Below the pieces are notes generated by a model. That model was not told the DNA's origin, made no database searches, and worked only from the letters and a program-made list of their open reading frames with translations. Position numbers and translations under genes: made by a program. 64,000 bases of DNA from Octopus sinensis (Eukaryota), in the NCBI RefSeq assembly GCF_006345805.1, contig NC_043002.1:72664001-72728000 (forward strand), read 5' to 3'. Below are positions 5,307 to 55,797 of the stretch, piece after piece. How positions within the stretch are numbered: the first letter of the stretch is position 1; every line of letters starts with the position of its first letter.

Positions 5307-7657
5307 AATCCTTAAAAAATGTTTTAGCCCGAAGGCCGCGGCCATGCTGGGGCACCACCGCTGAATGAGCTACACTAGTTTGTGAATCCACCTCTGATAC
5401 GTGGCACTTGATCAACAAGGGAGTTCGATGCTGCTGCCCGCATCCGTGTCTCCTGTCGTGAGGTAGGTTCATCTGGGACTCCCAACAAGAAGAGATCCAG
5501 TTTAGTTTTAAAGAAACCCACATCCACACCATGTAAGTCTCTCAGGCATTTAGGGAGGATGTTAAAGAGCTGTGGTCCTCTGAAACCCAAGCTGTTGCAG
5601 TATCTGGACCTGTATTTTGATGGTGATGTTGGAATCTTGGCACCACGCAGCGGCGCCCCGTTCTGCGGTTGGAGTAACTTTGAATGCCAAAGTTTGGGAC
5701 AAGACCCTCCAGGATTTTCCAGATGTATATCACTGCATATCTCTCCCGCCTCCGCTCCAGGGAGAAGAGGTTTAATACCTTCAGTCTTCTCAGTAGCTGA
5801 CATTTTGCATTGAGACGATTTTCTTTGTGTAGCTTCTCTGAGTTGCTTCGAGTTCTGTTGTTAGTTTTATATTGTGTGGTGACCAAAGTTGGGAGCAGTA
5901 GTCCAAGCGGCTGAGGACGAATGTTTTCCATAGGACCATCAGCCGTCTGCATTTTATCACCAGATTAGCAATATGCATTTGGAAAGATGCATCATTGCTC
6001 ATGTCAATGCCCAGGTCACGCACTGATTTTGACTCAGGGATTGCAATTCTTCCTGGGCCAGTGTATCCAGTCTTCACGTCATTTACCTTTGTGTGCCAGT
6101 AGCGCAGGGCCTGGAACTTACCTGCATTAAACTGCATGTTGTTGTCCTCAGCCCACCTGTATATTGTGTCCAGCTCATGTTGCAGATGCGCAATATTTTC
6201 AGGGTTTTGTATTGCGTGGGAGACTTTTGTGTCATCTGCATAGCTAGCAAGGGTGGTCATCGTAGCAACTGAAGGCATGTCTGAAAGGGCCACTATGAAC
6301 ATCAGTGGCCCCAAGACAGTGCCCTGTGGGACACCGCTTGTTATTTGCGTTTCCTTGGAGGTGGCTCCATTGCTCACAACTGCCTGTTTTCTGTCTTTTA
6401 GGAAGTTGTGCAGCCACTCTCCAAGTTTCCCGCCTATGCCGAGACCACGCAGTTTGTGACAGATCATACCATGGTCGACTTTATCAAAGGCTTTTGCAAA
6501 GTCGAGATATATTACATCCACATTTGAGCCATTTAGTAGCTGTTTCAACACCCAGTCATAGTGTTGCAGGAGCTGTGTTAGGCAGCCTCTACCTGGTCGA
6601 AATCCATGCTGGGGGTCAGACAGTAAGTCATTTTCTTCAAGGAACATGATTAGTTTCTTACGGACTATTCGTCCATGACTTTGCTGATGTGTGAGGTCAG
6701 AGAGATAGGCCTATAATTTTTAGCATCTGCTCTGCTACCTCCCTTATGGATAGGGCATATTACCCCCTCTTTCAGTTTGACTGGGAGCTTACCACTTGCA
6801 AGAAAGCTCTGAAAAAGAAGCTGTAGCGGTTTGCAAGGGCTCGTTTGCACGATTTGAGAAGGATCGCTGGGAATCCATCAGGTCCAGCAGCTGAGTTTGT
6901 GTCAATCTCATCAATGGCTAGTGTGATATCATCATCTTCGATGTTGATGTACTCAATTTTTGTCTCTTTGGCCGCTGGTAAAGTGGCAAAGAATTCTTCT
7001 GGGTTGTTACTTGCCTGTGTCCTAGAGGTGTAGTGAACACACTTGGGAACTGTTCGTTCAGTATTTCACTTATCCTCGTGGGATTTCCTGTGAGAGAGCC
7101 ATCTTTTGGAAGAGAGGTCCTATTCTCTGGTGCACTGTGGCTGTCTCTTTGGCAAACTTAAAGAAAGCTTTAGGGTTTGATTTTATATTTTCTATTACCC
7201 AAGCTTCTTTATCTGCTCTCTCCTTTTCATGGGACTGATGTAGACTTTTCTCAGTTTCCATTAGCATTCTTTCGAGCCGAGACTTCTCACCACTTTTGGT
7301 GTGCTTGCTCAGGCGGTTTGCAATCCTTGTCCGTCGTCTCATAAGAATCCTCCTTTCTCTAGGGATCCTGTTTTTGTTCTTGTGTGTGCTGGCCCTGCAC
7401 ATTGGGACATATTTGTCACATATGGCTTGTATTATGGACATGAAGTGTTTGTGTTTCATGTTTATGTCCGGTGTGGAGAGACATTCAGGCCAATCCTGTT
7501 TGAGGATCTCTTTCTCAATCGACTTCCAGTTGGCTTTATGAAAGTTTAAGTTGGAGAGATGGTGGGTGCTTCGTATAGGCTGTGTGTCTGCGGGGCTTTT
7601 GTTCCATACATAGACAGCTCTATTATGTTGTGATCCGAGATCATTGTCGGCATCACA

Positions 7658-16435: not shown

Positions 16436-16508
16436 GCCGAGATAGCTCAGTTGGGAGAGCGTTAGACTGCAGATCTAAAGGTCTCTGGTTCGCTTCCGAG
16501 TTTCAGAA
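16436..16508 (+). pseudogene. tRNA-Phe-derived pseudogene carrying a GCA (Cys) anticodon
   Basis: GCCGAGATAGCTCAGTTGGGAGAGCGTTAGACT-GCA-GATCTAAAGGTCTCTGGTTCGCTTCCGAGTTTCAGAA against the metazoan tRNA-Phe(GAA) sequence. Two acceptor-stem mismatches, one T-stem mismatch and A58>C; T-runs downstream. Confidence 0.85.
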
Positions 16509-17454: not shown

Positions 17455-18314
17455 TGCCTTCTGATAAAGTTTTGAACATGCCGTCGGGCGAAGAATTTTT
17501 GAACGGAAAAATTGTTGAAACAATTGAGTCTAATTTCGCTGCAGTAGCAAGACTAAAAGGAAAACCTTAAACATGACAAATGAATTGTTAAACCAATTCA
17601 AAAATATGTTCGAGAGGGAGGGGTATGATTTGAAAGCCACCTTTCTGAGTTAATTGAAAACACGGCAAAAAAATTGTTTTTAAATGTCTGAACATTAAAA
17701 CTAAAAAGTTGGATAATGCGTGAAGAGAGGGGGTCGAGAAATGCTTGCAACCAATATGGTGGGACATTGCATTTATCACCAAAGGTCGCAAATTTGCAAC
17801 CATTATCGTCCACCTAAAAAGTGAAGGGCGAAGGAGCTTTCAGTAATAGTACTGCTACTGACTGATTTAGGTAGACATACCTAAATATATCACAGTGGAG
17901 GAAATTCCACCAGAAATAGATGTAACATGACTCTGCGCTGCTCTAATCATGGGCCTCGAGGATAAAATAACAATTCTCGAGGTTAGTAAAATAGAGCAGC
18001 AACATTGGAAGGAACAAGGGCTAGAGATCATGATTCAAGCAGCTCAACAAACTCTTCAAGAGATAGTGGAAAACATCGTGATTAATGAGGAAACTACGTT
18101 GAGAGTGACGGTGGAGAGTAAGAGGCCACGGTGCTTCGAATGTGGGGGAAAAGGCCACATTCGGGTAAACTGCCCCGCCCTTAAAGAAGAAACAGCGCCG
18201 CCAGCAGAGTCTCCAACAAAAATCATAAAAGAGGAGACCATACCATCAACCGAAAACAAGGAAGACAATGAAGGATGGACTAATGTAACCCATAAAAAGA
18301 AAAAAAGTCCCTAA
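17455..18314 (+). pseudogene. LINE ORF1 (gag-like) remnant with CCHC zinc knuckle, probably L1/Tx1 group
   Basis: RPRCFECGGKGHIRVNCP (Cx2Cx4Hx4C) in ORF 17949-18314, followed by GWTNVTHKKKK; upstream part disrupted. Confidence 0.7.
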
Positions 18315-19644: not shown

Positions 19645-20015
19645 GGATATCATCATTACTCTTTTACTTGTTTCAGTCATTTGACTGTGGCCATGCTGGA
19701 GCACCACCTTTAGTCGAGGAAATCTACCCCAGGACTTATTCCTTGTAAGCCTAGTACTTATTTTATCGGTCTCTTTTTGCCGAACCGCTAAGTTACATAC
19801 CAGCATCGGTTGTCAAGCGATGTTGGGGGGAGGGGGCAAACACACACACATATATATATACATATACATTTATACGACGGGGTTTTTTTTTTCAGTTTCC
19901 GTCTACCAAATCCACTCACAAGGCTTTGGTCGGCCCGAGGCTATAGTAGAAGACACTTGCCCAAGGTTCCACGCAGTGGGACTGAATCCGGAACCATGTG
20001 GTTGGTAAGCAAGCT
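19645..20015 (-). mobile_element. SINE family A
   Basis: Reverse complement of the 60356-60750 family, CpGs retained. Confidence 0.9.
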
Positions 20016-20699
20016 ACTCCTGCTCATTTTTCAGTCGTTTCGTGTTTTATTTTGTGTACCGTGCATGCACGTTTTGCTATCGTTGCTGGTTTTCTATATA
20101 TGAATTATTGTTGCTTTCTGTCCTCTCTTTTACTCTTATCCAATCAGATGTACATCTAAGCACTGTACACTATAAGTTCATTATCAGCTTGGCTTTCCAC
20201 ACTTCATGGCAATCGAAATCAACCTCATTCTATAAATTGTTCTCTAACATGTAACGATAAGAATATTTCTGAGCGTGTGTCAGTAGTGTGATGATTTGAT
20301 TGAGTTCATGTCGATGGAAAAGAACACAAATTCCGTTAAGATTTTGAATACAAAAATATAAATTTTTATCGTTAACAAATTATGTACTGTCGTTACTACT
20401 AACGATTAAGAAATGATGTCTACACCAAGCTAATAGATCAATGTTTGTATGAGACGTTGTTGCGATCGAAAATGGTGCTAACTGTCATCATGTAATCCTA
20501 GCAGCTAGATGGTCTAAGCTGAATATTCGTCGTCGTCATTGTTGTTCATTGGTCTTGGCTGACGTACGGACACAGCTCACAGCTGACCAGTTTAAAGCGT
20601 GCGTCACTACTTCTGCAAGCAGAGATACAGTTGCATTTAGAACTGTTTCTTTCCAAAAGAAAACGGCACCAAAAGATAAAATTGTTAATGAGATGCTGT

Positions 20700-21304
20700 T
20701 GTAGTGATCCTATACAACGGCGCGCGCTCGCGCACCGTCCATTTTCTATTTCGCGCGTGTTGGTGCCTTTACCAAGAGAGAGAGAGGAAGGGCCCTCTCG
20801 CGCATGCGCGAAGCACCGGAAGAAGAACCCTTTTGCCTACGTAGCAGTTAGCCGAGGCAAGGGGGTCGTAAGACGTTGACCACCAGCGTCCAGCAAGCAG
20901 CGACTTGAGACAGCAGCGACTGAAGGCGACGGTCACGTATATTTTCTCTCCGTCCGAACTAGATTCTAGCAGCACCTTACCAAAAGGCCTTTAACCAAAT
21001 TGTTGCAGACAACATCGTCTCCATTGTTCGCCGCCATCTTTGACCAGTGTCGTTTTGCATTTGAACACGTTCTTATTTTACAGCGATAAGGTTCAGCACT
21101 GACACATTTATACCAAAGGGATACCAGATAACCACTTATTGTTACTGTTACCACATTAGAGAATAAAGTAGTATATATATCTTTTACGTCTGCGTCTTGT
21201 TGTTTCTGACTGGTAGAATTCTGGATAATTAAAGCAACGGCTAGTGATTGCCTCTTGTACCCCGAAAGTACAAGAGAAGATATATTCACACTAAGTTCCT
21301 TACA
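20700..21304 (+). repeat. 5' LTR
   Basis: TGTAGTGATCC...CCTTACA; CpG-rich U3; AATAAA near 21162; perfect 9-bp hairpin CTCTTGTAC/GTACAAGAG near the 3' end. Confidence 0.95.
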
Positions 21305-21305
21305 G

Positions 21306-21325
21306 TGGTGACCCCCGACGTGATT
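21306..21325 (+). promoter_or_regulatory. Primer-binding site complementary to the tRNA-Trp 3' end
   Basis: TGGTGACCCCCGACGTGATT (one extra C) against tRNA-Trp ...AATCACGTCGGGGTCA-CCA. Confidence 0.9.
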
Positions 21326-22487
21326 CTGGTCTAAAACCAGAGATCACTTAACAACAAAGAAATCCAGTTTTTCTGCGAAGTCGGAACACGATTTAACTCT
21401 ACGCATTCATCTTTCGACGATTTGTTTCCTGTCACCACAAACAGTTATAGAAGGAGCCTCTTTCTTATTCTTCAACATGATGACGGACACCATCATATCA
21501 TCGATGTTTTTTCTCTGCCTTCGTCATCATCATCGTCGTCTTTCTACTTCACGTCGTCGTTATCTTCGTCGCCATCACCACTAAGAACAATGTTGTCTCA
21601 AGTCCACTACAGTTGCCTTCCACCACCACCGTCGCCTTTCAACACCGTCGACCTCCACAAGATGTACATAGCAACTCGCGGAACTTTAGCGTGCACGCTG
21701 TTTGTGCATATGCACACCAAGGATTAACAGCACCGTCTATCTGCGAGATTCTTCTGTAACGATTTAACATGTCACAGCATCGAAGCTACAACCGCTACAC
21801 ATTGTGTTCAACCGGCATCTGCATTTTGTGATTTCAACATTTCTGTTACAGAACGAACTGCTATTGTGCATCAGGCTATTACAGACTGGTAAATTAACTC
21901 TTGTCTGAAATAACCATGAGAGACATTTTTTCTATGCGCTGTATTTTTATTTATTTTTATTTTGCTTGCATTCACCTTGTATGTATTTCTGTCGCACACA
22001 CGTACACACACATAAATGCTATCTCGCACATACATACGTCACACATGCTTTTCTCGCTTGTTTTTTTTTCCATGCTAAATTTGCCTTTGGTAGACACACC
22101 TCATTTCTGTAGACCCTAGGGGTCACGTATACATAGAGAGGGTTGTTTGTCCATTATAACGCGCCGGCATGCCATACTTTTGTTCCTGTACGAACGAGGC
22201 ATATAATCGCTCAACCACTGGCATATTCATTGCTGTTTTTTCGGTCTGGCAAGCTCTATTGCATTTCATGCGCCTTTGCTTCGCACGTGTATTGCCTTGT
22301 TTTTTGCAACACGTTGGCGTTAGCTTAATTCTTTTCCCGACTCATAGAATGTAGGATGTTCACATGCGCTGCGCCTATGTATGGGCGTAATTATTTTTCC
22401 CTGTTAGACTCCTGTTGGTCACGTAATTAACAGAGAAATTATCTGTGTCGCGCATCACACCAGCATGCTTGCACTTTTGCCTTTTGT

Positions 22488-22670
22488 GTTACTAGCGATC
22501 TATCTGTCGATTCCATTTCCTCTCCTGCAGCAATTGACTTAACTGCTATTTCGCAGGATCAACTACCTTTAGAGAAGTTGGATTTAATTTCGCCTAGGTT
22601 CATTAACTGTGAGTTTGCTTTCCTCCCGCTCCCTACAGCGGAAGGCTCTATACTTTGTGACGTATCCACT
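22488..22670 (+). pseudogene. Gypsy pol remnant (RNase H to integrase junction)
   Basis: VTSDLSVDSISSPAAIDLTAISQDQ..EGSILCDVST matches the ADALSR..IDL..Q..LCDVSTG junction motif. Confidence 0.65.
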
Positions 22671-22842
22671 TTCATGCATGCACTTTTGAATTTTGCTCAT
22701 ATTGAGTATTTTTTCCTTTAGTAAATTTCTTGTGTATGATGTAAATTTTGCCATTTTATTATATTGTGTGCTATTTTGGTTGTCTGGTATCCACCTTGAG
22801 TTTATAGTCACTACAGGGAATTTTGTGTCGTGCTTACGCACT

Positions 22843-22851
22843 GGGGTGGAG
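22843..22851 (+). promoter_or_regulatory. Polypurine tract
   Basis: GGGGTGGAG, 3 nt upstream of the 3' LTR. Confidence 0.75.
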
Positions 22852-22854
22852 CTC

Positions 22855-23460
22855 TGTAGTGATCCTATACAACGGCGCGCGCTCGCGCACCGTCCATTTT
22901 CTATTTCGCGCGTGTTGGTGCCTTTACCAAGAGAGAGAGAGGAAGGGCCCTCTCGCGCATGCGCGAAGCACCGGAAGAAGAACCCTTTTGCCTACGTAGC
23001 AGTTAGCCGAGGCAAGGGGGTCGTAAGACGTTGGCCACCAGCGTCCAGCAAGCAGCGACTTGAGACAGCAGCGACTGAAGGCGACGGTCACGTATATTTT
23101 CTCTCCGTCCGAACTAGATTCTAGCAGCACCTTACCAAAAGGCCTTTAACCAAATTGTTGCAGACCAACATCGTCTCCATTGTTCGCCGCCATCTTTGAC
23201 CAGTGTCGTTTTGCATTTGAACACTTTCTTATTTTACAGCGATAAGGTTCAGCACTGACACATTTATACCAAAGGGATACCAGATAACCACTTATTGTTA
23301 CTGTTACCACATTAGAGAATAAAGTAGTATATATATCTTTTACGTCTGCGTCTTGTTGTTTCTGACTGGTAGAATTCTGGATAATTAAAGCAACGGCTAG
23401 TGATTGCCTCTTGTACCCCGAAAGTACAAGAGAAGATATATTCACACTAAGATCGTTACA
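22855..23460 (+). repeat. 3' LTR
   Basis: TGTAGTGATCC...CGTTACA, near-identical to the 5' LTR. Confidence 0.95.
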
Positions 23461-23695
23461 CTGTTTTACAAGATGCTGACTAGTCAGTTTCTTGATTGAG
23501 CTATTCACGTTCGTCTTGTTTACGTGGTTTTTGCACCGAATACTGTGACCTGGTTTCGATTGCTAAGAAATAAGTTGATGTTTGGGACCACCAAATATTC
23601 CTGATACAGAATCATCAATTATTGCTAGTGATTAGGATGTGTGTATGCTTGTGTATTGTATAGTTATAAGTTGAAGAACGACTCCCACAAACATC

Positions 23696-24055
23696 TGTAG
23701 AGACGACCGTACGTAAAGGAGAATGGCGACAAATGTCTCTGCAAGTGGTGACCTCTCGTTTTCTAACATGTAGCTTCAAAATATACTCAGCCGACCTTAC
23801 GTCACTCGAACGTCTACAAAATGCTGACCCAGGGCCAGTTTAATTGACCAACCATTCTAATTTCACCTTTTCGCTACAGTTATGTCCATTTTTTTATTAT
23901 TGTCTCTTTGTCTCCTACAAAACGTCTGATAGGGGGCCCTGTAGCGTACCTCGGTGATATCCTCACTGCTTGAGAGATATAATACAAATCACGTCGGGGA
24001 CACTACTTGTAAAGACATTTGTCGCCATTCTCCTTTACGTACGGTTGTCTCTACA
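23696..24055. mobile_element. 360-bp inverted-repeat element with TG..CA ends, 4-bp TSD and PBS-like sequence inside each arm
   Basis: 48-bp arms 23696-23743 and 24008-24055 (45/48 identical in inverted orientation); TSD CATC (23692-23695, 24056-24059); AGTGGTGACC after the left arm and an 18/20 tRNA-Trp PBS match (23986-24005, minus strand) after the right arm. Confidence 0.85.
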
Positions 24056-24429
24056 CATCTATTGTAAGTTGAGCACTTGATTTTACCAAAACGCTGCACT
24101 GTAATGTAAACCTACGTTGTTACGACATACTGAAGCATTCTTCAAAGTTGCGTTGATTTGTTTTTAATATTCATATACATACACACGAATACAAACACAT
24201 ACATAAACACACACGCACTCACACATACACACACATAATGGAAAATCTAACATTATAGTCATTTATCGTTAGCAACATTATCGTTGATGTCTCGCGAATA
24301 TTTGTCTCCTGTGAGCACTAGAGATACCCTTTTACATCATAATATTTCTTATTCAGAAGTATTAGCCTCCTACAAGTGCTGTGTACATTTTACGCACTTA
24401 CGCTGTCGCCTACGTTCGTTTGTTAATTG

Positions 24430-24548
24430 ATACACACACACACACACACACACATATACATACATATGTATATGTATATATAAATATATATATATATAAA
24501 TATATATATGTGTGTGTGTGTGTGTGTGTATATGTATATATAAATATG

Positions 24549-24592
<44 letters not shown>

Positions 24593-24647
24593 TACATTAT
24601 ACATATATATATGCATATATATATATATACACACACATATATACATT

Positions 24648-24687
<40 letters not shown>

Positions 24688-25160
24688 TACATTTATACAT
24701 ATATACATATACATACATTTATATATATATACACACATATACATTTATACATATATACATATACATACATTTATACATATACATACATTTATACACACAT
24801 ATATACATTTATACATATATATATATATGCATATATATATATATATATATACATATATACAAGGACTGCCACTCTAGAATTGGACTGTTCAGTCACAGCA
24901 GACACTGCACATCATCAAAGTAGGCCCCACCCTTGGCGCAACCCATTGTCTATCAAGACAGACGGGGATAAAGAATACATTTATACATATATATATGCAT
25001 ATATATACATATATACATATGTATATATATGCATATATATACATATGTATATATATACACACATATATATATGCATATATATATACATATATACATATGT
25101 ATATATATACACACATATATATATGTATATATATATATATCAATTATATATATATATAAT
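24430..25160. repeat. (CA)/(TA)/(TACA) microsatellite complex, interrupted at about 24860-24985
   Basis: Directly visible. Confidence 0.95.
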
Positions 25161-26280
25161 TTATGGTACCAGTGCCGGTGGCACACACTTTGTGGTACCA
25201 GTGCCGGTGGCACACATGAGAACCATCCGAACGTGGCCGTAGCCAGTTCCGCATCGACCGGCCTCCGTGCTGTGGGCACGTAACAAACACCATCCGATCA
25301 TGGCCGTTCGCCAGCCTCATCTGGCACCTGTGTCGGTGGCACATAAAAACACCTTCCGAAGACCCGGCAAGACTAGTCAGTCCACCTGTGCATACCTTCC
25401 TTCTTGTGAAGACCGGTTGAGGCAAGTGAAAATCAAATCAAATCAAATCAAATCAAAATAGACAAAATAGATGAACATCAATGGAATTTGTATCTTGTGG
25501 TACCAGTGCCTGTGGCACACAAGAAATCCATCAGTGCCGTAGTCAGTGCGGTGGGCACATGACAAACACCATCCGATCGTGGCCGTTCGCCAGCCTCATC
25601 TAGCACCTGTGTCGGTGGCACATAAAAACACCATCCGAACACCCGGCAAGACTAGTCAGGCCATAACGCATGGCCCCTACCTGGGACGTAGTCAGTCCAC
25701 CTGTGCATACCTTCCTTCTTGTGACACTTGTGAAGACCTGTTGAGGCAAGTGAAAATCAAATCAAAACAAATCAAAATAGATGAACATCAATGGAATTTG
25801 TATCTTTGTGGCACGTGGCACATAAGAAAACCATCCGAACGTGGCCGTAGCCAGTACCGCATCGACTGGCCTCCGTGCTGTGGGCACGTAACAAGCACCA
25901 TCCGATCGTGGCCGTTTGCCAGCCTCATAAAAACACCATCCGAGCGTGGCCGTCTGCCAGCCTCGTCTGGCACCTGTGTCGGTGGCACATAAAAAACCAT
26001 CCGAGCGTGGCCGTCTGCCAGCCTCATCTGGCACCTGTGTCGGTGGCACATAAAAACACCATCCGAGCGCGGCCGTTTGCCAGCCTCGTCTGGCACCTGT
26101 GTCGGTGGCACATAAAATCACCCACTACACTCTCGGAGTGGTTGGCGTTAGGAAGGGCATCCAGCTGTAGAAACACTGCCAGATCTGACTGGACTGGTGC
26201 AGCTTTCGGGCTCCCCAGACCCCAGTTGAACCGTCCAACCCATGCTAGCATGGAAAGCGGACGTTAATTGATGATGATGA
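25160..26280 (+). mobile_element. RTE LINE 3' UTR with internal tandem 55-60 bp units and internal duplication
   Basis: Contains gaagacccggcaagactag (matches the ORF end of 36525-38052), repeated ccatccga..gccagcctc..ggcacctgtgtcggtggcacataaaa units, and the tail catgctagcatggaaagcggacgttaa(tga)n. Confidence 0.85.
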
Positions 26281-29464: not shown

Positions 29465-29845
29465 TCATTCTCTCTTTATTCTTTTACTTGTCTCAGTCAT
29501 TTGACTGTGGCCATGCTGGAGCACCGCCTCTTAGTCGAGCAAATTGTAAACCTAGTACTTATTCTATCGATCTCTTTTGCCAAACCGCTAAGTTACGGGG
29601 ACGTAAACACACCAACATCGGTTCTCAAGCGATGTTGTGGGGGACAAACCCAGACACACAAACATGCACACACACATATATACATATACAAATATACGAT
29701 GGGCTTCTTTCAGTTTCTGTCTACCAAATCCACTCACAAGGCTTTGGTCGGCCTGAGGCTATAGTAGAAGACACTTGCCCAAGGAGTCACGCAGTGGGAC
29801 TGAACCCAGAACCATGTGGTTGGTAAGCAAGCTACTTATCACACA
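29465..29845 (-). mobile_element. SINE family A
   Basis: Family consensus blocks on the minus strand. Confidence 0.9.
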
Positions 29846-35680: not shown

Positions 35681-36524
35681 ACAGATGCAGTCAGAATCAC
35701 AGCTTGGTAGTCTCTGTTGCAGCTGTCCATGTCATGTCTTACAGTGTTCGCAGAGCTGTAATATTGATGACAAGTATTGTTGTTGCTACTGGTCTTGTTC
35801 TTGCTTTGATGCTATTGTTAATGGTCAGTATGGTGGCAGGTATGACAGTGGTGGTGGTTATGGTGGTAGTAGTGGTACAGCTATTGCTCCTGTTGCAGCT
35901 TTTGATGATGATGATGATGACGACGACAGCAGTGGTGGTGGGGGGGCATCAGCGGCGGCAGCGGTGAGGAGGGGGGAGGAGAAGGAGGACGACGACAACA
36001 ATGACGACAATAGCAACAAAAACAAACATTATTTTCATTTAAGGTTATGGAAAAGGTTATTTTCTACTGGCCATTTCTTTTGATAGGAAGTTCATCTATT
36101 TTACTTTTACAAGTTTCTAAGAAACTGTCTTTGCAAACTATCTCTAAAAGGCACAAAACGCTGCTTGTTGAACAACCATTCTCTATAAGATAGCTTTGCA
36201 GTTTATAATTAGCTTTTAAATAATACTGGTGGGAATTCCAGAGAAATAGAATACAATCCTGGAAATTCCTGATTCAATCTTTAACTAAATTTCCCCAAGA
36301 ATTCCCCTTTGCATTTCAACCAAATGTCTCAGGAATTTAGAACTCTGGAATCCCAGTGGAGAAACTCTAATATATACACACTACACATACGCACAAAAGT
36401 ATTTCAGGAATGCATAAGCACATAAGTATATACATACAAACAATTTTATTCACGTATACAAGTAAGTACATACACACTCATAAATACAAGTATATTTGCT
36501 CATATATAAACATGCATGGCTATA

Positions 36525-38052
36525 GCCTAGTCACCCGTATAGTTAACCAGGTGATACACGAAGGAGTCATACCCAATGACTGGTGTAGCAGCATAATAGT
36601 CAACTGCTACAAAGGTAAAGGTGACGCCCTAGATACAAATAACTACAGGGGTATCAAGCTGCTGGATCAGGTAATGAAGGTTACGGAGAGGGTTATAGCC
36701 CAACTAATTAGAGAGAGAGTTAGCTTAGATGAGATGCTGTTTGGGTTCGTGCCAGGGAAAAGTACTACTGATGCTATATTCCTGGTAAGACAGCTGCAGG
36801 AGAAATACCTAGCCAAAGATAAGCCCCTGTACCTGGCTTTTGTTGACATGGAGAAAGCCTTCAACAGGGTCCCCCAATCCCTTATCTGGTGGTCAATGAG
36901 GAAACTAGGGATAGATGAATGGTTAGTGAGAGCTGTGCGAGCCATGTACAGAGACGCTGCTAGTAAGGTGAGGGTTGGCAACGAGTACAGTGAAGAATTC
37001 CGGGTAGAGGTTGGGGTCCACCAAGGTTCAGTCCTCAGTCCCCTCCAATTTATCATAGTCCTCCGGGCAATAACGGAGGAATTCAAGATAGGATGCCCCT
37101 GGGAGCTCCTCTATGCTGATGACCTTGCTCTAATTGCTGAGTCTCTATCAGAACTGGAGGAGAAGTTTCAGGTGTGGAAGCAATGTTTAGAATCGAAGGG
37201 CCTTAGAATCAACCTAGCCAAAACCAAAGTCCTAATAAGTAGGAAGGTAGACCAATCACAAACGCCTTCAGGTAGATGGCCCTGCTCGATATGTAAAAAA
37301 GGCATAGGTAGAAACTCTATAAGGTGCACCAAGTGTAAGCTATGGACACATAAGAGGTGTAGCAATGTCAAAGGAAGGCTAACTAGGAAAATAGTTTTTG
37401 TCTGTGGCAGATGCTCAGGAGCAATAAACGCTGAAAATGTGAAGAGACCAACTTCTACCACGTTCCAGGGAGAAAAACTAGAAGTAGTTGATAGCTTCCG
37501 CTACCTAGGTGACCAAGTCAGTAGCGGGGGTGGGTGTGCTGAAAGTGTAACTGCTAGAGTAAGAATAGCCTGGGCAAAGTTTAGAGAGCTCTTACCCCTG
37601 CTGGTGACAAAAGGCCTCTCGCTCAGAGTAAAAGGCAGACTGTATGATGCATGTGTACGTACAGCCATGCTACATGGTAGTGAAACATGGAGGATATGCG
37701 TAAGCTCACAAGAAATGAAGCCAGTATGCTCCGATGGATGTGTAGTGTCAGTGTTCATAATCGACAGAGTGTAAGTACCTTGAGAGAAAAGTTGGACCTA
37801 AGAAGCATCAGTTGTGGTGTGCAAGAGAGACGTTTGCACTGGTATGGTCATGTGACGAGAATGGCTGAAGATAGTTGTGTGCAAAAGTGCCACACCCTAG
37901 CAGTTGAGGGAACCTGTGGAAGAGGTAGACCCAGGAAAACCTGGGACGAGGTGATGAAGCATGACCTTCGAACTTTAGGTCTCACCAAGGAAATGACTAG
38001 AGACCGAGACCTATGGAAGTATGCTGTGCGTGAGAAGACGCGGCAAGACTAG
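36525..38052 (+). mobile_element. RTE-clade LINE, 5'-truncated RT with an internal PHD-like zinc finger; 3' UTR absent
   Basis: NYRGIKLL, FGFVPGKSTTDAIF, FVDMEKAF, GVHQGSVLSP, LYADD, C4HC3 motif at 37277-37414, LHGSETW, WYGHV..GRGRPRKTW; one frameshift near 37690. Confidence 0.93.
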
Positions 38053-55465: not shown

Positions 55466-55511
55466 AACACGACATTTCGGCTGATATACCCTCCAGCCTT
55501 CATCAGGTGTC
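55466..55511 (-). ncRNA. Minimal type-I hammerhead (HHR7)
   Basis: GACAC-CTGATGA-A-GGCTG/gagggtatat/CAGCC-GAAA-T-GTC-GTGTT; extra nucleotide after A9; stem III has no loop (AUGU, from ACGU), so it should need dimerisation. Confidence 0.75.
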
Positions 55512-55752
55512 TTGGGGAAATTTCGAACCCGGGTTCTCATTCCTAAGGATTTTTTCGATGTTGTTGTTATTGTTATTATTATTATTCAAGTCACTGCCTG
55601 GAATCGAATGCCATATGCCAAGGGCATATGGCGTAGTGGTTAAGAGTGCAGGCTACTAACCCCAAGATTCCGAGTTCGATTCCAGGCAGTGACCTGAATA
55701 ATAACAATAACAACAACATCGAAAAAATACCTTAGGTTCAAAATTTCCCCAA

Positions 55753-55797
55753 GACACCTAATGAAGGCTGGAAGGTACATGAGCCAAAACGTTTTAA
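55753..55797 (+). ncRNA. Degenerate hammerhead on the right arm (HHR8)
   Basis: GACAC-CTAATGA-A-GGCT..AGCC-AAAAC-GTT; G5 and G12 mutated to A. Confidence 0.55.

What the first reader, a model, noticed from the sequence alone, without database searches (positions are those of the whole stretch)
23692..24059. MITE-like element whose inverted ends are 48-bp mini-LTRs each followed by a tRNA-Trp PBS
Seen: TG..CA 48-bp arms in inverted orientation, a 4-bp TSD (CATC), a PBS-like sequence immediately inside each arm (8 nt on the left, 18/20 on the right) and an internal PPT-like AGGGGGCCC followed by TGTAG. It lies 235 bp from a Gypsy derivative that also starts TGTAG, uses PBS-Trp and has a 4-bp TSD. 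Established: Gypsy integrases process TG..CA ends and make 4-bp TSDs; Ginger DNA transposons use Gypsy-like integrases with TGT termini and 4-bp TSDs. Inference: an LTR-retrotransposon end rearranged into a TIR element, either a retro-to-DNA-transposon intermediate or an element primed by tRNA from both ends.
Basis: partly seen in the sequence, partly recalled or inferred. Interest (0 to 1): 0.75.

Follow-up and report, generated by a model that had tools for sequence, protein, structure and literature searches.

The report
Inverted LTR-plus-primer-site ends on a mini-transposon
A 360-bp non-coding mobile element in an octopus genome has inverted ends that are each the start of a tRNA-Trp-primed LTR retrotransposon (a 48-bp LTR-like unit plus its primer-binding site); this is unusual and hints at how retrotransposon ends can turn into DNA-transposon-like ends, but only one copy could be examined.

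Summary
The element at 23696-24055 (360 bp) starts TGTAG, ends CTACA, and is flanked by a perfect 4-bp duplication (CATC). Its 48-bp inverted arms match at 45/48; the inverted repeat continues to 58 bp (53/58). Two bases inside the right arm lies an 18-mer matching the tRNA-Trp primer-binding site at 16/18 (19/21 if extended). The left arm keeps TGGTGACC plus a decayed remainder. Each arm has its own 9-10-bp terminal inverted repeat, as an LTR does. A G-run followed by TGTAG lies inside. The neighbouring 2.76-kb non-autonomous LTR element shares TGTAG ends, a tRNA-Trp site and a 4-bp duplication.

There is no direct repeat, so this is not an ordinary miniature LTR element. CATC fits neither Ginger1 nor Ginger2 target preferences, but it fits CsRn1-type Gypsy integrases.

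My best reading is a retro-derived chimera whose 3' LTR was replaced by an inverted LTR-plus-primer-site module, inserted as one unit by a Gypsy-type integrase. Whether it is a one-off or a multi-copy family could not be tested, because no searchable collection holds octopus genomic DNA beyond 76 kb. Interest is moderate.

The parts
23692..23695 (.). Left copy of the 4-bp target-site duplication, CATC
   Evidence: Read directly. It is identical to 24056-24059, and the inverted repeat ends exactly here.
23696..23743 (+). Left 48-bp arm, an LTR-like unit TGTAGAGAC...GTCTCTGCA
   Evidence: Its own terminal inverted repeat matches at 8/9.
23744..23765 (+). Spacer AG, then the left tRNA-Trp primer-binding-site remnant: TGGTGACC intact (23746-23753), the rest decayed
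   Evidence: About 14/20 to the tRNA-Trp complement, with one gap.
23766..23930 (+). AT-rich non-coding interior. It holds extra end-like pentamers: TGTAG at 23769, and CTACA at 23814, 23874 and 23915. It also holds TTGTCTCCTACA (23908-23919), which resembles the right terminus.
   Evidence: 7 TGTAG/CTACA pentamers against 0.71 expected, and no other 360-bp stretch of the window has more than 4. No open reading frame longer than 54 aa.
23931..23944 (+). G-run resembling a polypurine tract (AGGGGG), then CCC, then TGTAG. This looks like the junction between a polypurine tract and a 3' LTR.
   Evidence: The neighbour has the same layout at 22837-22859: GGGGTGGAG, CTC, TGTAG.
23956..23980 (-). 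Stem-loop (GATATCCTCA / CTGCT / TGAGAGATAT) lying 5 nt downstream of the right-hand primer-binding site when read on the minus strand. It is likely a leader hairpin of the inverted module.
   Evidence: the fold shows this local hairpin. The neighbour also has a hairpin just after its primer-binding site (context).
23985..24007 (-). Right tRNA-Trp primer-binding site (23988-24005, 16/18; with 23985-23987, 19/21) plus the 2-nt spacer (24006-24007)
24008..24055 (-). Right 48-bp arm, an LTR-like unit in inverted orientation
   Evidence: Its own terminal inverted repeat matches at 9/10.
24056..24059 (.). Right copy of the target-site duplication, CATC
20696..23464 (+). Context, not part of the element: a non-autonomous LTR element. 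LTRs at 20700-21304 and 22855-23460, tRNA-Trp primer-binding site at 21306-21324, duplication CTGT.
   Evidence: (repeat families D7 and D8).

Best explanation
The element is a non-coding chimera derived from a very small tRNA-Trp-primed LTR retroelement.

Its left roughly 250 bp keep the normal order of parts: LTR-like unit, 2-nt spacer, primer-binding site, AT-rich interior, G-run, TGTAG. Where the 3' LTR should be, there is instead an inverted copy of the 5' module: the 48-bp LTR-like unit, spacer, primer-binding site, and about 40 nt of leader with a hairpin. Both outer ends therefore present the same integrase substrate (...GTCTCTACA-3').

The whole piece was inserted once, as a unit, by a Gypsy-type DDE integrase that makes 4-bp staggered cuts. 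That integrase is probably of the CsRn1-like kind that also inserted the neighbouring element.

The most likely origin of the inversion is an error of reverse transcription. Plus-strand strong-stop DNA consists of exactly LTR plus primer-binding site. It was either used as a primer or copied after a template switch, which produced a cDNA with inverted LTR-plus-primer-site termini.

- **Shown:** the anatomy, the retro origin of the arms, and the unit insertion.
- **Inferred:** the reverse-transcription error, the identity of the integrase, and the idea that this copy is a dead-end or low-copy product rather than a member of an amplified family.
For: - The inverted repeat and duplication are far beyond chance.
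- The primer-binding site is 16/18 at a fixed place 2 nt inside the arm. It contains the complement of CCA. There is no similarity to the rest of tRNA-Trp and no tRNA or Rfam hit. This points to a primer-binding-site origin, not a tRNA-gene origin.
- Each arm has LTR-type 9-10-bp terminal inverted repeats (chance 3e-5).
- The G-run plus TGTAG has the same layout as the neighbour's junction between polypurine tract and LTR.
- The inverted repeat ends where strong-stop DNA would end, that is LTR plus primer-binding site. No interior inverted similarity was found.
- A 4-bp duplication with no target motif, combined with a tRNA-Trp site, matches the CsRn1 clade (PMC2582038). A neighbour with the same hallmarks and 99-100% identical LTRs shows that such machinery was recently active here.
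- An inverted TRIM dimer flanked by a single duplication has been validated by PCR in maize (PMC4717578, Fig. 2C).
- Tandem TRIM arrays are common. They would explain the extra internal TGTAG/CTACA motifs.
Against: - No parent family with 48-bp direct LTRs was seen, and an LTR that short is unprecedented. It is unclear how such a unit could supply a promoter, R and U5.
- The arms are better conserved (3/48 differences) than the adjoining primer-binding-site segments (8/25; Fisher p=0.006). Simple neutral decay of one perfect inverted duplication does not predict this. Selection on the terminal inverted repeats in an amplifying family would.
- The enrichment of internal end-like pentamers could equally be subterminal transposase-binding repeats.
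- Copy number is unknown.
- The similarity of a putative second internal LTR-like unit is not significant (p about 0.03-0.1).
Confidence: 0.42

Rival explanations
1. It is a member of a multi-copy MITE-like family that is cut and pasted by an integrase-derived transposase, either Ginger-like or a new lineage recently derived from a CsRn1-like Gypsy element. The LTR end plus primer-binding site in the inverted ends would be a relic of the family's retrotransposon ancestor.
For: - Size, lack of coding capacity, 48-58-bp inverted ends, TGTNR termini and a 4-bp duplication all fit the Ginger descriptions (PMC2836005). That paper includes a 252-bp non-autonomous Ginger2 element with 52-bp inverted ends.
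- Ginger elements occur in molluscs (Aplysia and Littorina; PMC2836005).
- The arms are significantly better conserved than the adjoining primer-binding-site segments.
- The terminal pentamer is repeated five more times inside, resembling subterminal binding sites.
- Almost all small elements with inverted ends and a target duplication belong to families (general knowledge).
Against: - CATC fits neither the Ginger1 target (CCGG/CCGT, 99% of cases) nor the Ginger2 target (RTATAY) (PMC2836005).
- There is no second copy in the 64-kb window or in 76 kb of other octopus DNA. This is a very weak test.
- No integrase-type transposase was seen in the window.
- As far as I could find, no Ginger element has been reported with a primer-binding site in its inverted ends.
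Confidence: 0.3
2. The whole 360 bp is a solo LTR of an unusual Gypsy family whose LTR carries long terminal inverted repeats. The tRNA-like stretch in its U5 part could pair with the element's own primer-binding site.
For: - TG...CA ends, 360 bp length and a 4-bp duplication are the standard signature of a solo LTR.
- The neighbour shows that this kind of element is active at the locus.
Against: - LTR terminal inverted repeats are normally a few bases long; the neighbour has about 5.
- A 58-70-bp inverted repeat containing a primer-binding site is not a known LTR feature.
- No primer-binding site follows the right end, and no polypurine tract precedes the left end.
- No second copy lies within the window to serve as a partner LTR.
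Confidence: 0.1
3. Two unrelated, oppositely oriented truncated insertions of a short-LTR element happen to lie 264 bp apart, and the CATC repeat is coincidental. Alternatively, the structure is an assembly artefact.
For: Only one locus could be examined. The interiors next to the two primer-binding sites are unrelated.
Against: - Both arms end at exactly the same terminal nucleotide.
- They are flanked by the same 4 bp in direct orientation (chance 1/256).
- Two independent integrations would each carry their own duplication and their own 3' ends.
- The flanks are unique and continuous.
- Palindromic assembly artefacts do not produce 58-bp imperfect arms with target duplications.
Confidence: 0.05

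Closest known systems
TRIM / SMART miniature LTR retrotransposons, including tandem and inverted 'TA-TRIM' arrays (PMC4717578)
   Same: - Tiny and non-coding, with TG..CA ends.
- A primer-binding site right after the 5' terminal repeat, and a purine run before a TG further in.
- A short target duplication.
- Complex arrays are known, including two inverted TRIMs inside one duplication.
   Different: - There is no direct terminal repeat here; the terminal repeats are inverted.
- The LTR-like unit is only 48 bp, which I believe is shorter than any described LTR.
- The inverted partner is only LTR, primer-binding site and leader, not a whole element.
Ginger1 and Ginger2/TDD DNA transposons and their non-autonomous derivatives (PMC2836005)
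   Same: - Terminal inverted repeats of 40-270 bp (Ginger1) or 50-180 bp (Ginger2).
- Termini of the form TGTNR.
- 4-bp target duplication.
- Present in molluscs, with MITE-sized derivatives.
   Different: - The target CATC does not fit CCGG/CCGT or RTATAY.
- No autonomous partner is known here.
- Primer-binding sites inside the inverted ends are not described for Ginger.
CsRn1-clade Ty3/Gypsy LTR retrotransposons (PMC2582038)
   Same: A tRNA-Trp primer-binding site, 4-bp duplications without target preference, and TGT...ACA-type LTR ends. These are the same hallmarks as the neighbouring element at 20700-23460.
   Different: There is no gag or pol, and no direct LTRs. Assignment of the integrase to this clade is inferred from these hallmarks only.
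Plus-strand strong-stop DNA of retroviruses and LTR retrotransposons (textbook reverse-transcription intermediate)
   Same: The repeated module is exactly what this intermediate contains: a complete LTR followed by the copy of the primer tRNA's 3' end.
   Different: - The module is normally transferred to regenerate a direct LTR. Here it sits inverted at the far end.
- The match is 21 nt, which runs past the usual 18-nt stop.

Membership tests
MITE (miniature inverted-repeat transposable element) | Small (<800 bp), non-coding, terminal inverted repeats, flanking target-site duplication | tested here: met
   360 bp; no ORF longer than 54 aa; inverted ends 45/48 and 53/58; duplication CATC.
MITE (miniature inverted-repeat transposable element) | Multi-copy family with different target-site duplications | not testable with these tools
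   - Only 2 arms (1 element) in the window.
- None in 76 kb of O. bimaculoides and O. vulgaris DNA.
- Metagenome scans found 0.
- The protein-collection trick found 0, but the collection holds only annotated octopus proteins.
Ginger1 | Inverted ends of 40-270 bp, TGTNR termini, 4-bp duplication | tested here: met
   against PMC2836005.
Ginger1 | Target specificity CCGG (75%) or CCGT/ACGG (24%) | tested here: not met
   The duplication is CATC. This is a single case.
Ginger2/TDD | Inverted ends of 50-180 bp, TGTNR termini, 4-bp duplication in metazoans | tested here: met
   48-58 bp, TGTAG, 4 bp.
Ginger2/TDD | AT-rich target RTATAY | tested here: not met
   The target context is ACAAA-CATC-TATTG. 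This is a single case.
Ginger1 / Ginger2 | Autonomous relative that encodes a Gypsy-integrase-like transposase and shares the inverted ends | not testable with these tools
   No octopus genome is searchable by DNA here. No integrase was seen in the window's large ORFs.
TRIM / LTR retrotransposon | Direct long terminal repeats | tested here: not met
   No direct repeat in the self-BLAST. The best direct alignment of arm against interior is not significant.
TRIM / LTR retrotransposon | Primer-binding site next to the 5' repeat, polypurine tract before the 3' repeat, TG..CA ends, 4-6-bp duplication | tested here: met
   Primer-binding site. G-run plus TGTAG: (a weak polypurine tract, only 6 purines). 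Ends and duplication.
Solo LTR | The same sequence occurs elsewhere as paired direct LTRs around an internal region | not testable with these tools
   No other copy in the sequence available.
CsRn1-clade Gypsy (source of the integrase) | tRNA-Trp primer-binding site, 4-bp duplication without target preference, TGT..ACA ends | tested here: met
   against PMC2582038.
CsRn1-clade Gypsy (source of the integrase) | Characteristic Gag and Pol proteins | tested here: not met
   Neither this element nor the neighbour encodes any. An autonomous partner would have to lie elsewhere in the genome.

The most novel reading that the evidence does not exclude
The element belongs to an amplifying family whose terminal inverted repeats were built from the LTR-plus-primer-binding-site module of a Gypsy retrotransposon. 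The family would be mobilised through those ends by a Gypsy or Gypsy-derived integrase. That would make it a living intermediate showing how an LTR retrotransposon can give rise to a Ginger-like DNA transposon (or its non-autonomous parasites), with the primer-binding site still legible in the inverted ends.
Probability: 0.22. Interest if true: 0.8.

Novelty: new variant of a known kind. Interest (0 to 1): 0.5.

Why it matters
Ginger DNA transposons and Gypsy retrotransposons share an integrase and the same TGTNR ends. No element has been described that documents the change of end architecture from direct LTRs to inverted repeats. An element whose inverted ends are visibly 'LTR end plus tRNA primer site', and which was inserted as one unit with a Gypsy-type 4-bp duplication, shows that such substrates do form and are accepted by an integrase.

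If it proves to be a family, it would be a direct example of a class I to class II transition and would make that long-standing hypothesis testable in octopus genomes. If it is a one-off, it is still a clean natural record of an aberrant reverse-transcription product, and a caution for annotation pipelines that would call it a MITE or a solo LTR.

Tried and rejected
1. **tRNA-derived SINE or tRNA pseudogene in the right half.** Rejected. ARAGORN and Rfam find nothing.
2. **Ordinary TRIM with direct LTRs (123 bp and 116 bp, using the internal CTACA and TGTAG).** Rejected. No direct similarity was found.
3. **A second internal mini-LTR plus primer-binding site at 23769-23835.** Suggestive by eye but not significant (p about 0.03 against shuffles and against genomic controls). 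Not claimed.
4. **Copy census, all attempts.** The census remains open.
   - Two exact-pattern scans of the JGI metagenomes found 0.
   - A composite of the element's open translations searched against 5.8 billion proteins found 0.
   - The control with SINE and LTR peptides hit only annotated Octopus bimaculoides proteins, and none of the window's ORFs are in the collection. The negative result is therefore uninformative.
   - 76 kb of O. bimaculoides and O. vulgaris DNA fetched around three genes hold no copy. This is far too small a sample.
5. **Paralogous empty site in the window.** None; the flanks are unique.
6. **Other elements in the window with TGT..ACA ends, inverted repeats and a 4-bp duplication.** Only microsatellite noise and one unrelated structure at 55559-55718.
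7. **Literature search for inverted LTR-plus-primer-site elements or MITEs derived from LTRs.** No direct precedent except the inverted TA-TRIM.
8. **Housekeeping.** A scratch file holding the gene-less neighbouring LTR element, made for one BLAST, was deleted.

Full report
**Setting.** The window is eukaryotic, repeat-rich DNA from an octopus or a close relative.
- Peptides translated from a SINE present twice in the window (19653-20018 and 29473-29836) hit only annotated Octopus bimaculoides proteins.
- A reverse-transcriptase ORF at 36410-37774 has its closest named relatives in O. vulgaris (85% identity) and O. bimaculoides (82%).
- Repeats in the window match fetched octopus loci at about 80-94%.

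**Check of the observation.**
- The element spans 23696-24055 (360 bp), begins TGTAG, ends CTACA, and is flanked by CATC on both sides.
- A 43-nt core of the arm occurs exactly twice in 64 kb, in inverted orientation, with 0 and 1 mismatch against 0.00 expected. Over 48 bp the arms agree at 45 positions.
- A self-BLAST shows the inverted repeat continues to 58 bp at 91%. It therefore runs through the 2-nt spacer into the primer-binding-site-like segment.
- On the minus strand, 23988-24005 reads TAGTGTCCCCGACGTGAT, which is 16/18 to the tRNA-Trp primer-binding site. The window expectation is 0.02, and the chance at one fixed position is 2e-8. With three more bases the match to the tRNA 3' end is 19/21.
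- The left arm is followed by AG and TGGTGACC. After that comes a stretch that aligns to the rest of the site only with gaps.
- AGGGGGCCC followed by TGTAG lies at 23931-23944.
- The neighbouring element has LTRs at 20700-21304 and 22855-23460 that are 99-100% identical. It has TGTAG...TTACA ends, TGGTGACCCCCGACGTGAT at 21306-21324 and the duplication CTGT. It has no meaningful ORF, so it is a non-autonomous derivative. Its 'Gypsy' label is an inference.

**What the parts are.**
- The tRNA-related stretch is a primer-binding site, not a piece of a tRNA gene or a SINE head. It includes the complement of the CCA tail, which eukaryotic tRNA genes do not encode. Similarity to tRNA-Trp stops after about 21 nt. 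ARAGORN and Rfam find no tRNA.
- Each 48-bp arm is itself bounded by a 9-10-bp inverted repeat: TGTAGAGAC(A)...(T)GTCTCTNCA, matching at 8/9 on the left and 9/10 on the right. The chance is about 3e-5. This is how an LTR is built, with an integrase site at each end.
- The arm is followed by a 2-nt spacer and TGG..., as at a junction between a 5' LTR and its primer-binding site.
- The right-hand module continues for about 40 nt with a stable hairpin at 23956-23980. It sits in about the same place as a hairpin after the neighbour's primer-binding site (context).
- The G-run plus three pyrimidines plus TGTAG copies the layout of the neighbour's junction between polypurine tract and 3' LTR.
- Read left to right, the order is therefore: LTR-like unit, primer-binding site, interior, polypurine tract, TGTAG, and then an inverted leader, primer-binding site and LTR-like unit.
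- There is no direct repeat between the two ends. It is therefore not a normal miniature LTR element.
- The pentamer TGTAG/CTACA occurs 7 times in the element against 0.71 expected. No other 360-bp stretch of the window has more than 4. One internal copy, TTGTCTCCTACA at 23908-23919, nearly repeats the right terminus. A putative second internal 'mini-LTR plus primer-binding site' at 23769-23835 is not statistically secure.

**How it got there.** The perfect 4-bp duplication sits at ends defined independently by the inverted repeat. Together with the TG...CA termini, this means the 360 bp were inserted as one piece by an integrase-type DDE enzyme making a 4-bp stagger.
- Ginger1 inserts almost only at CCGG/CCGT, and Ginger2 at RTATAY (PMC2836005). 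CATC fits neither.
- CsRn1-clade Gypsy elements combine a tRNA-Trp primer-binding site with 4-bp duplications and no target preference (PMC2582038). This is the profile of both this element and its young neighbour.
- I therefore attribute the insertion to a Gypsy-type integrase. This is an inference.

**How the inverted ends arose.** The repeated module, a complete LTR-like unit plus primer-binding site, is what plus-strand strong-stop DNA contains. The inverted repeat does not extend beyond it.
- The simplest route is an error of reverse transcription. Strong-stop DNA was either used as a primer on the 3' part of a template or copied after a template switch. Either way the result is a cDNA with inverted LTR-plus-primer-site termini. 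Both of those termini are good integrase substrates because the unit's two ends are nearly the same.
- A structural precedent exists. Among the tandem arrays of the maize SMART TRIM, one PCR-validated case consists of two inverted TRIMs inside a single duplication (PMC4717578, Fig. 2C).
- I give this model about 0.4.

**What argues the other way.**
- The arms differ at 3/48 positions, but the adjoining primer-binding-site segments differ at 8/25 (p=0.006). Selection on the inverted ends in an amplifying family predicts this. Neutral decay of one duplication does not, although a single complex indel in the left site could mimic it.
- The internal end-like pentamers could be subterminal binding sites.
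- Nearly all small elements with inverted ends and a target duplication belong to families.
- A functional retroelement with a 48-bp LTR is unprecedented.
- For these reasons the MITE-family reading remains a strong rival at about 0.3. It could be Ginger-like, or a new lineage derived from a CsRn1-like integrase.
- A solo LTR with abnormally long terminal inverted repeats (about 0.1), and coincidence or artefact (about 0.05), are less likely.

**What could not be done.** The decisive test is a genome-wide copy census. No collection available here holds octopus genomic DNA that can be searched by nucleotide sequence.
- Two metagenome scans were empty.
- A search of the protein collection with the element's open translations was empty. 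The control showed that only annotated octopus proteins are present, so that result says nothing about copy number.
- 76 kb of octopus DNA fetched around three genes contain no copy. This excludes only very high abundance.
- The flanks are unique within the window.

**Verdict.**
- The anatomical half of the interpretation, an LTR-retrotransposon end turned into a terminal inverted repeat and inserted as a unit, is supported.
- The evolutionary half is untested. This covers the claims of a retro-to-DNA-transposon intermediate, a Ginger connection, and priming from both ends. In the Ginger detail it is not favoured.
- The element is best filed as a new variant of known kinds, lying between a miniature LTR retroelement and an integrase-type MITE. 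Interest is moderate and would rise sharply if a family is found.

Noticed in passing
window 55480-55790: A long palindromic, foldback-like structure. Its inner part (55559-55718) has 20/20 inverted ends (TGTTGTTGTTATTGTTATTA) with TCGA on both sides, and it encloses a tRNA-like segment (GGCGTAGTGGTTAAGAGTGCAGGC...GTTCGATTCCAGGCAGTGACC). The flanks outside it are themselves inverted repeats.
   Followed up: partly
window 20696-23464: A young non-autonomous LTR element (2.76 kb). Its LTRs are about 605 bp and 99-100% identical. Its tRNA-Trp primer-binding site has one extra C. The duplication is CTGT, and the interior has no coding capacity. The last bases of the two LTRs differ (TTCCTTACA against ATCGTTACA).
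   Followed up: partly
window 17949-18314: A 121-aa ORF with a CCHC zinc knuckle (CFECGGKGHIRVNCP), resembling a Gag fragment, upstream of the LTR element. It was not assigned to any element.
   Followed up: no
window 19653-20018 and 29473-29836: Two copies of a SINE of about 365 bp, each with an internal microsatellite. Pieces of this SINE are translated in annotated Octopus bimaculoides proteins (a Myb-like protein and actin-related protein 10 isoform X1), which suggests exonisation or annotation artefacts.
   Followed up: partly
window 36410-37774 (also 5790-6647): Reverse-transcriptase ORFs. The 454-aa one has an RVT_1 domain plus a PHD/C1-like zinc finger. Its relatives at 50-60% identity are abundant in marine metagenome contigs and in Hydractinia, Mercenaria and Branchiostoma. 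The top hit (74%) is labelled as a Herbaspirillum MAG protein on a 1.5-kb contig, which is almost certainly eukaryotic contamination.
   Followed up: no
window 16436-16508: A tRNA-Cys(GCA) gene predicted by ARAGORN. It is the only tRNA in the window.
   Followed up: no
window 24160-25160 and 25164-26150: Large compound TA/CA/TATG microsatellite blocks immediately downstream of the element. Next to them is a family of repeats of about 280 bp period, with copies at 93% identity (repeat families D6, D10 and D12).
   Followed up: no
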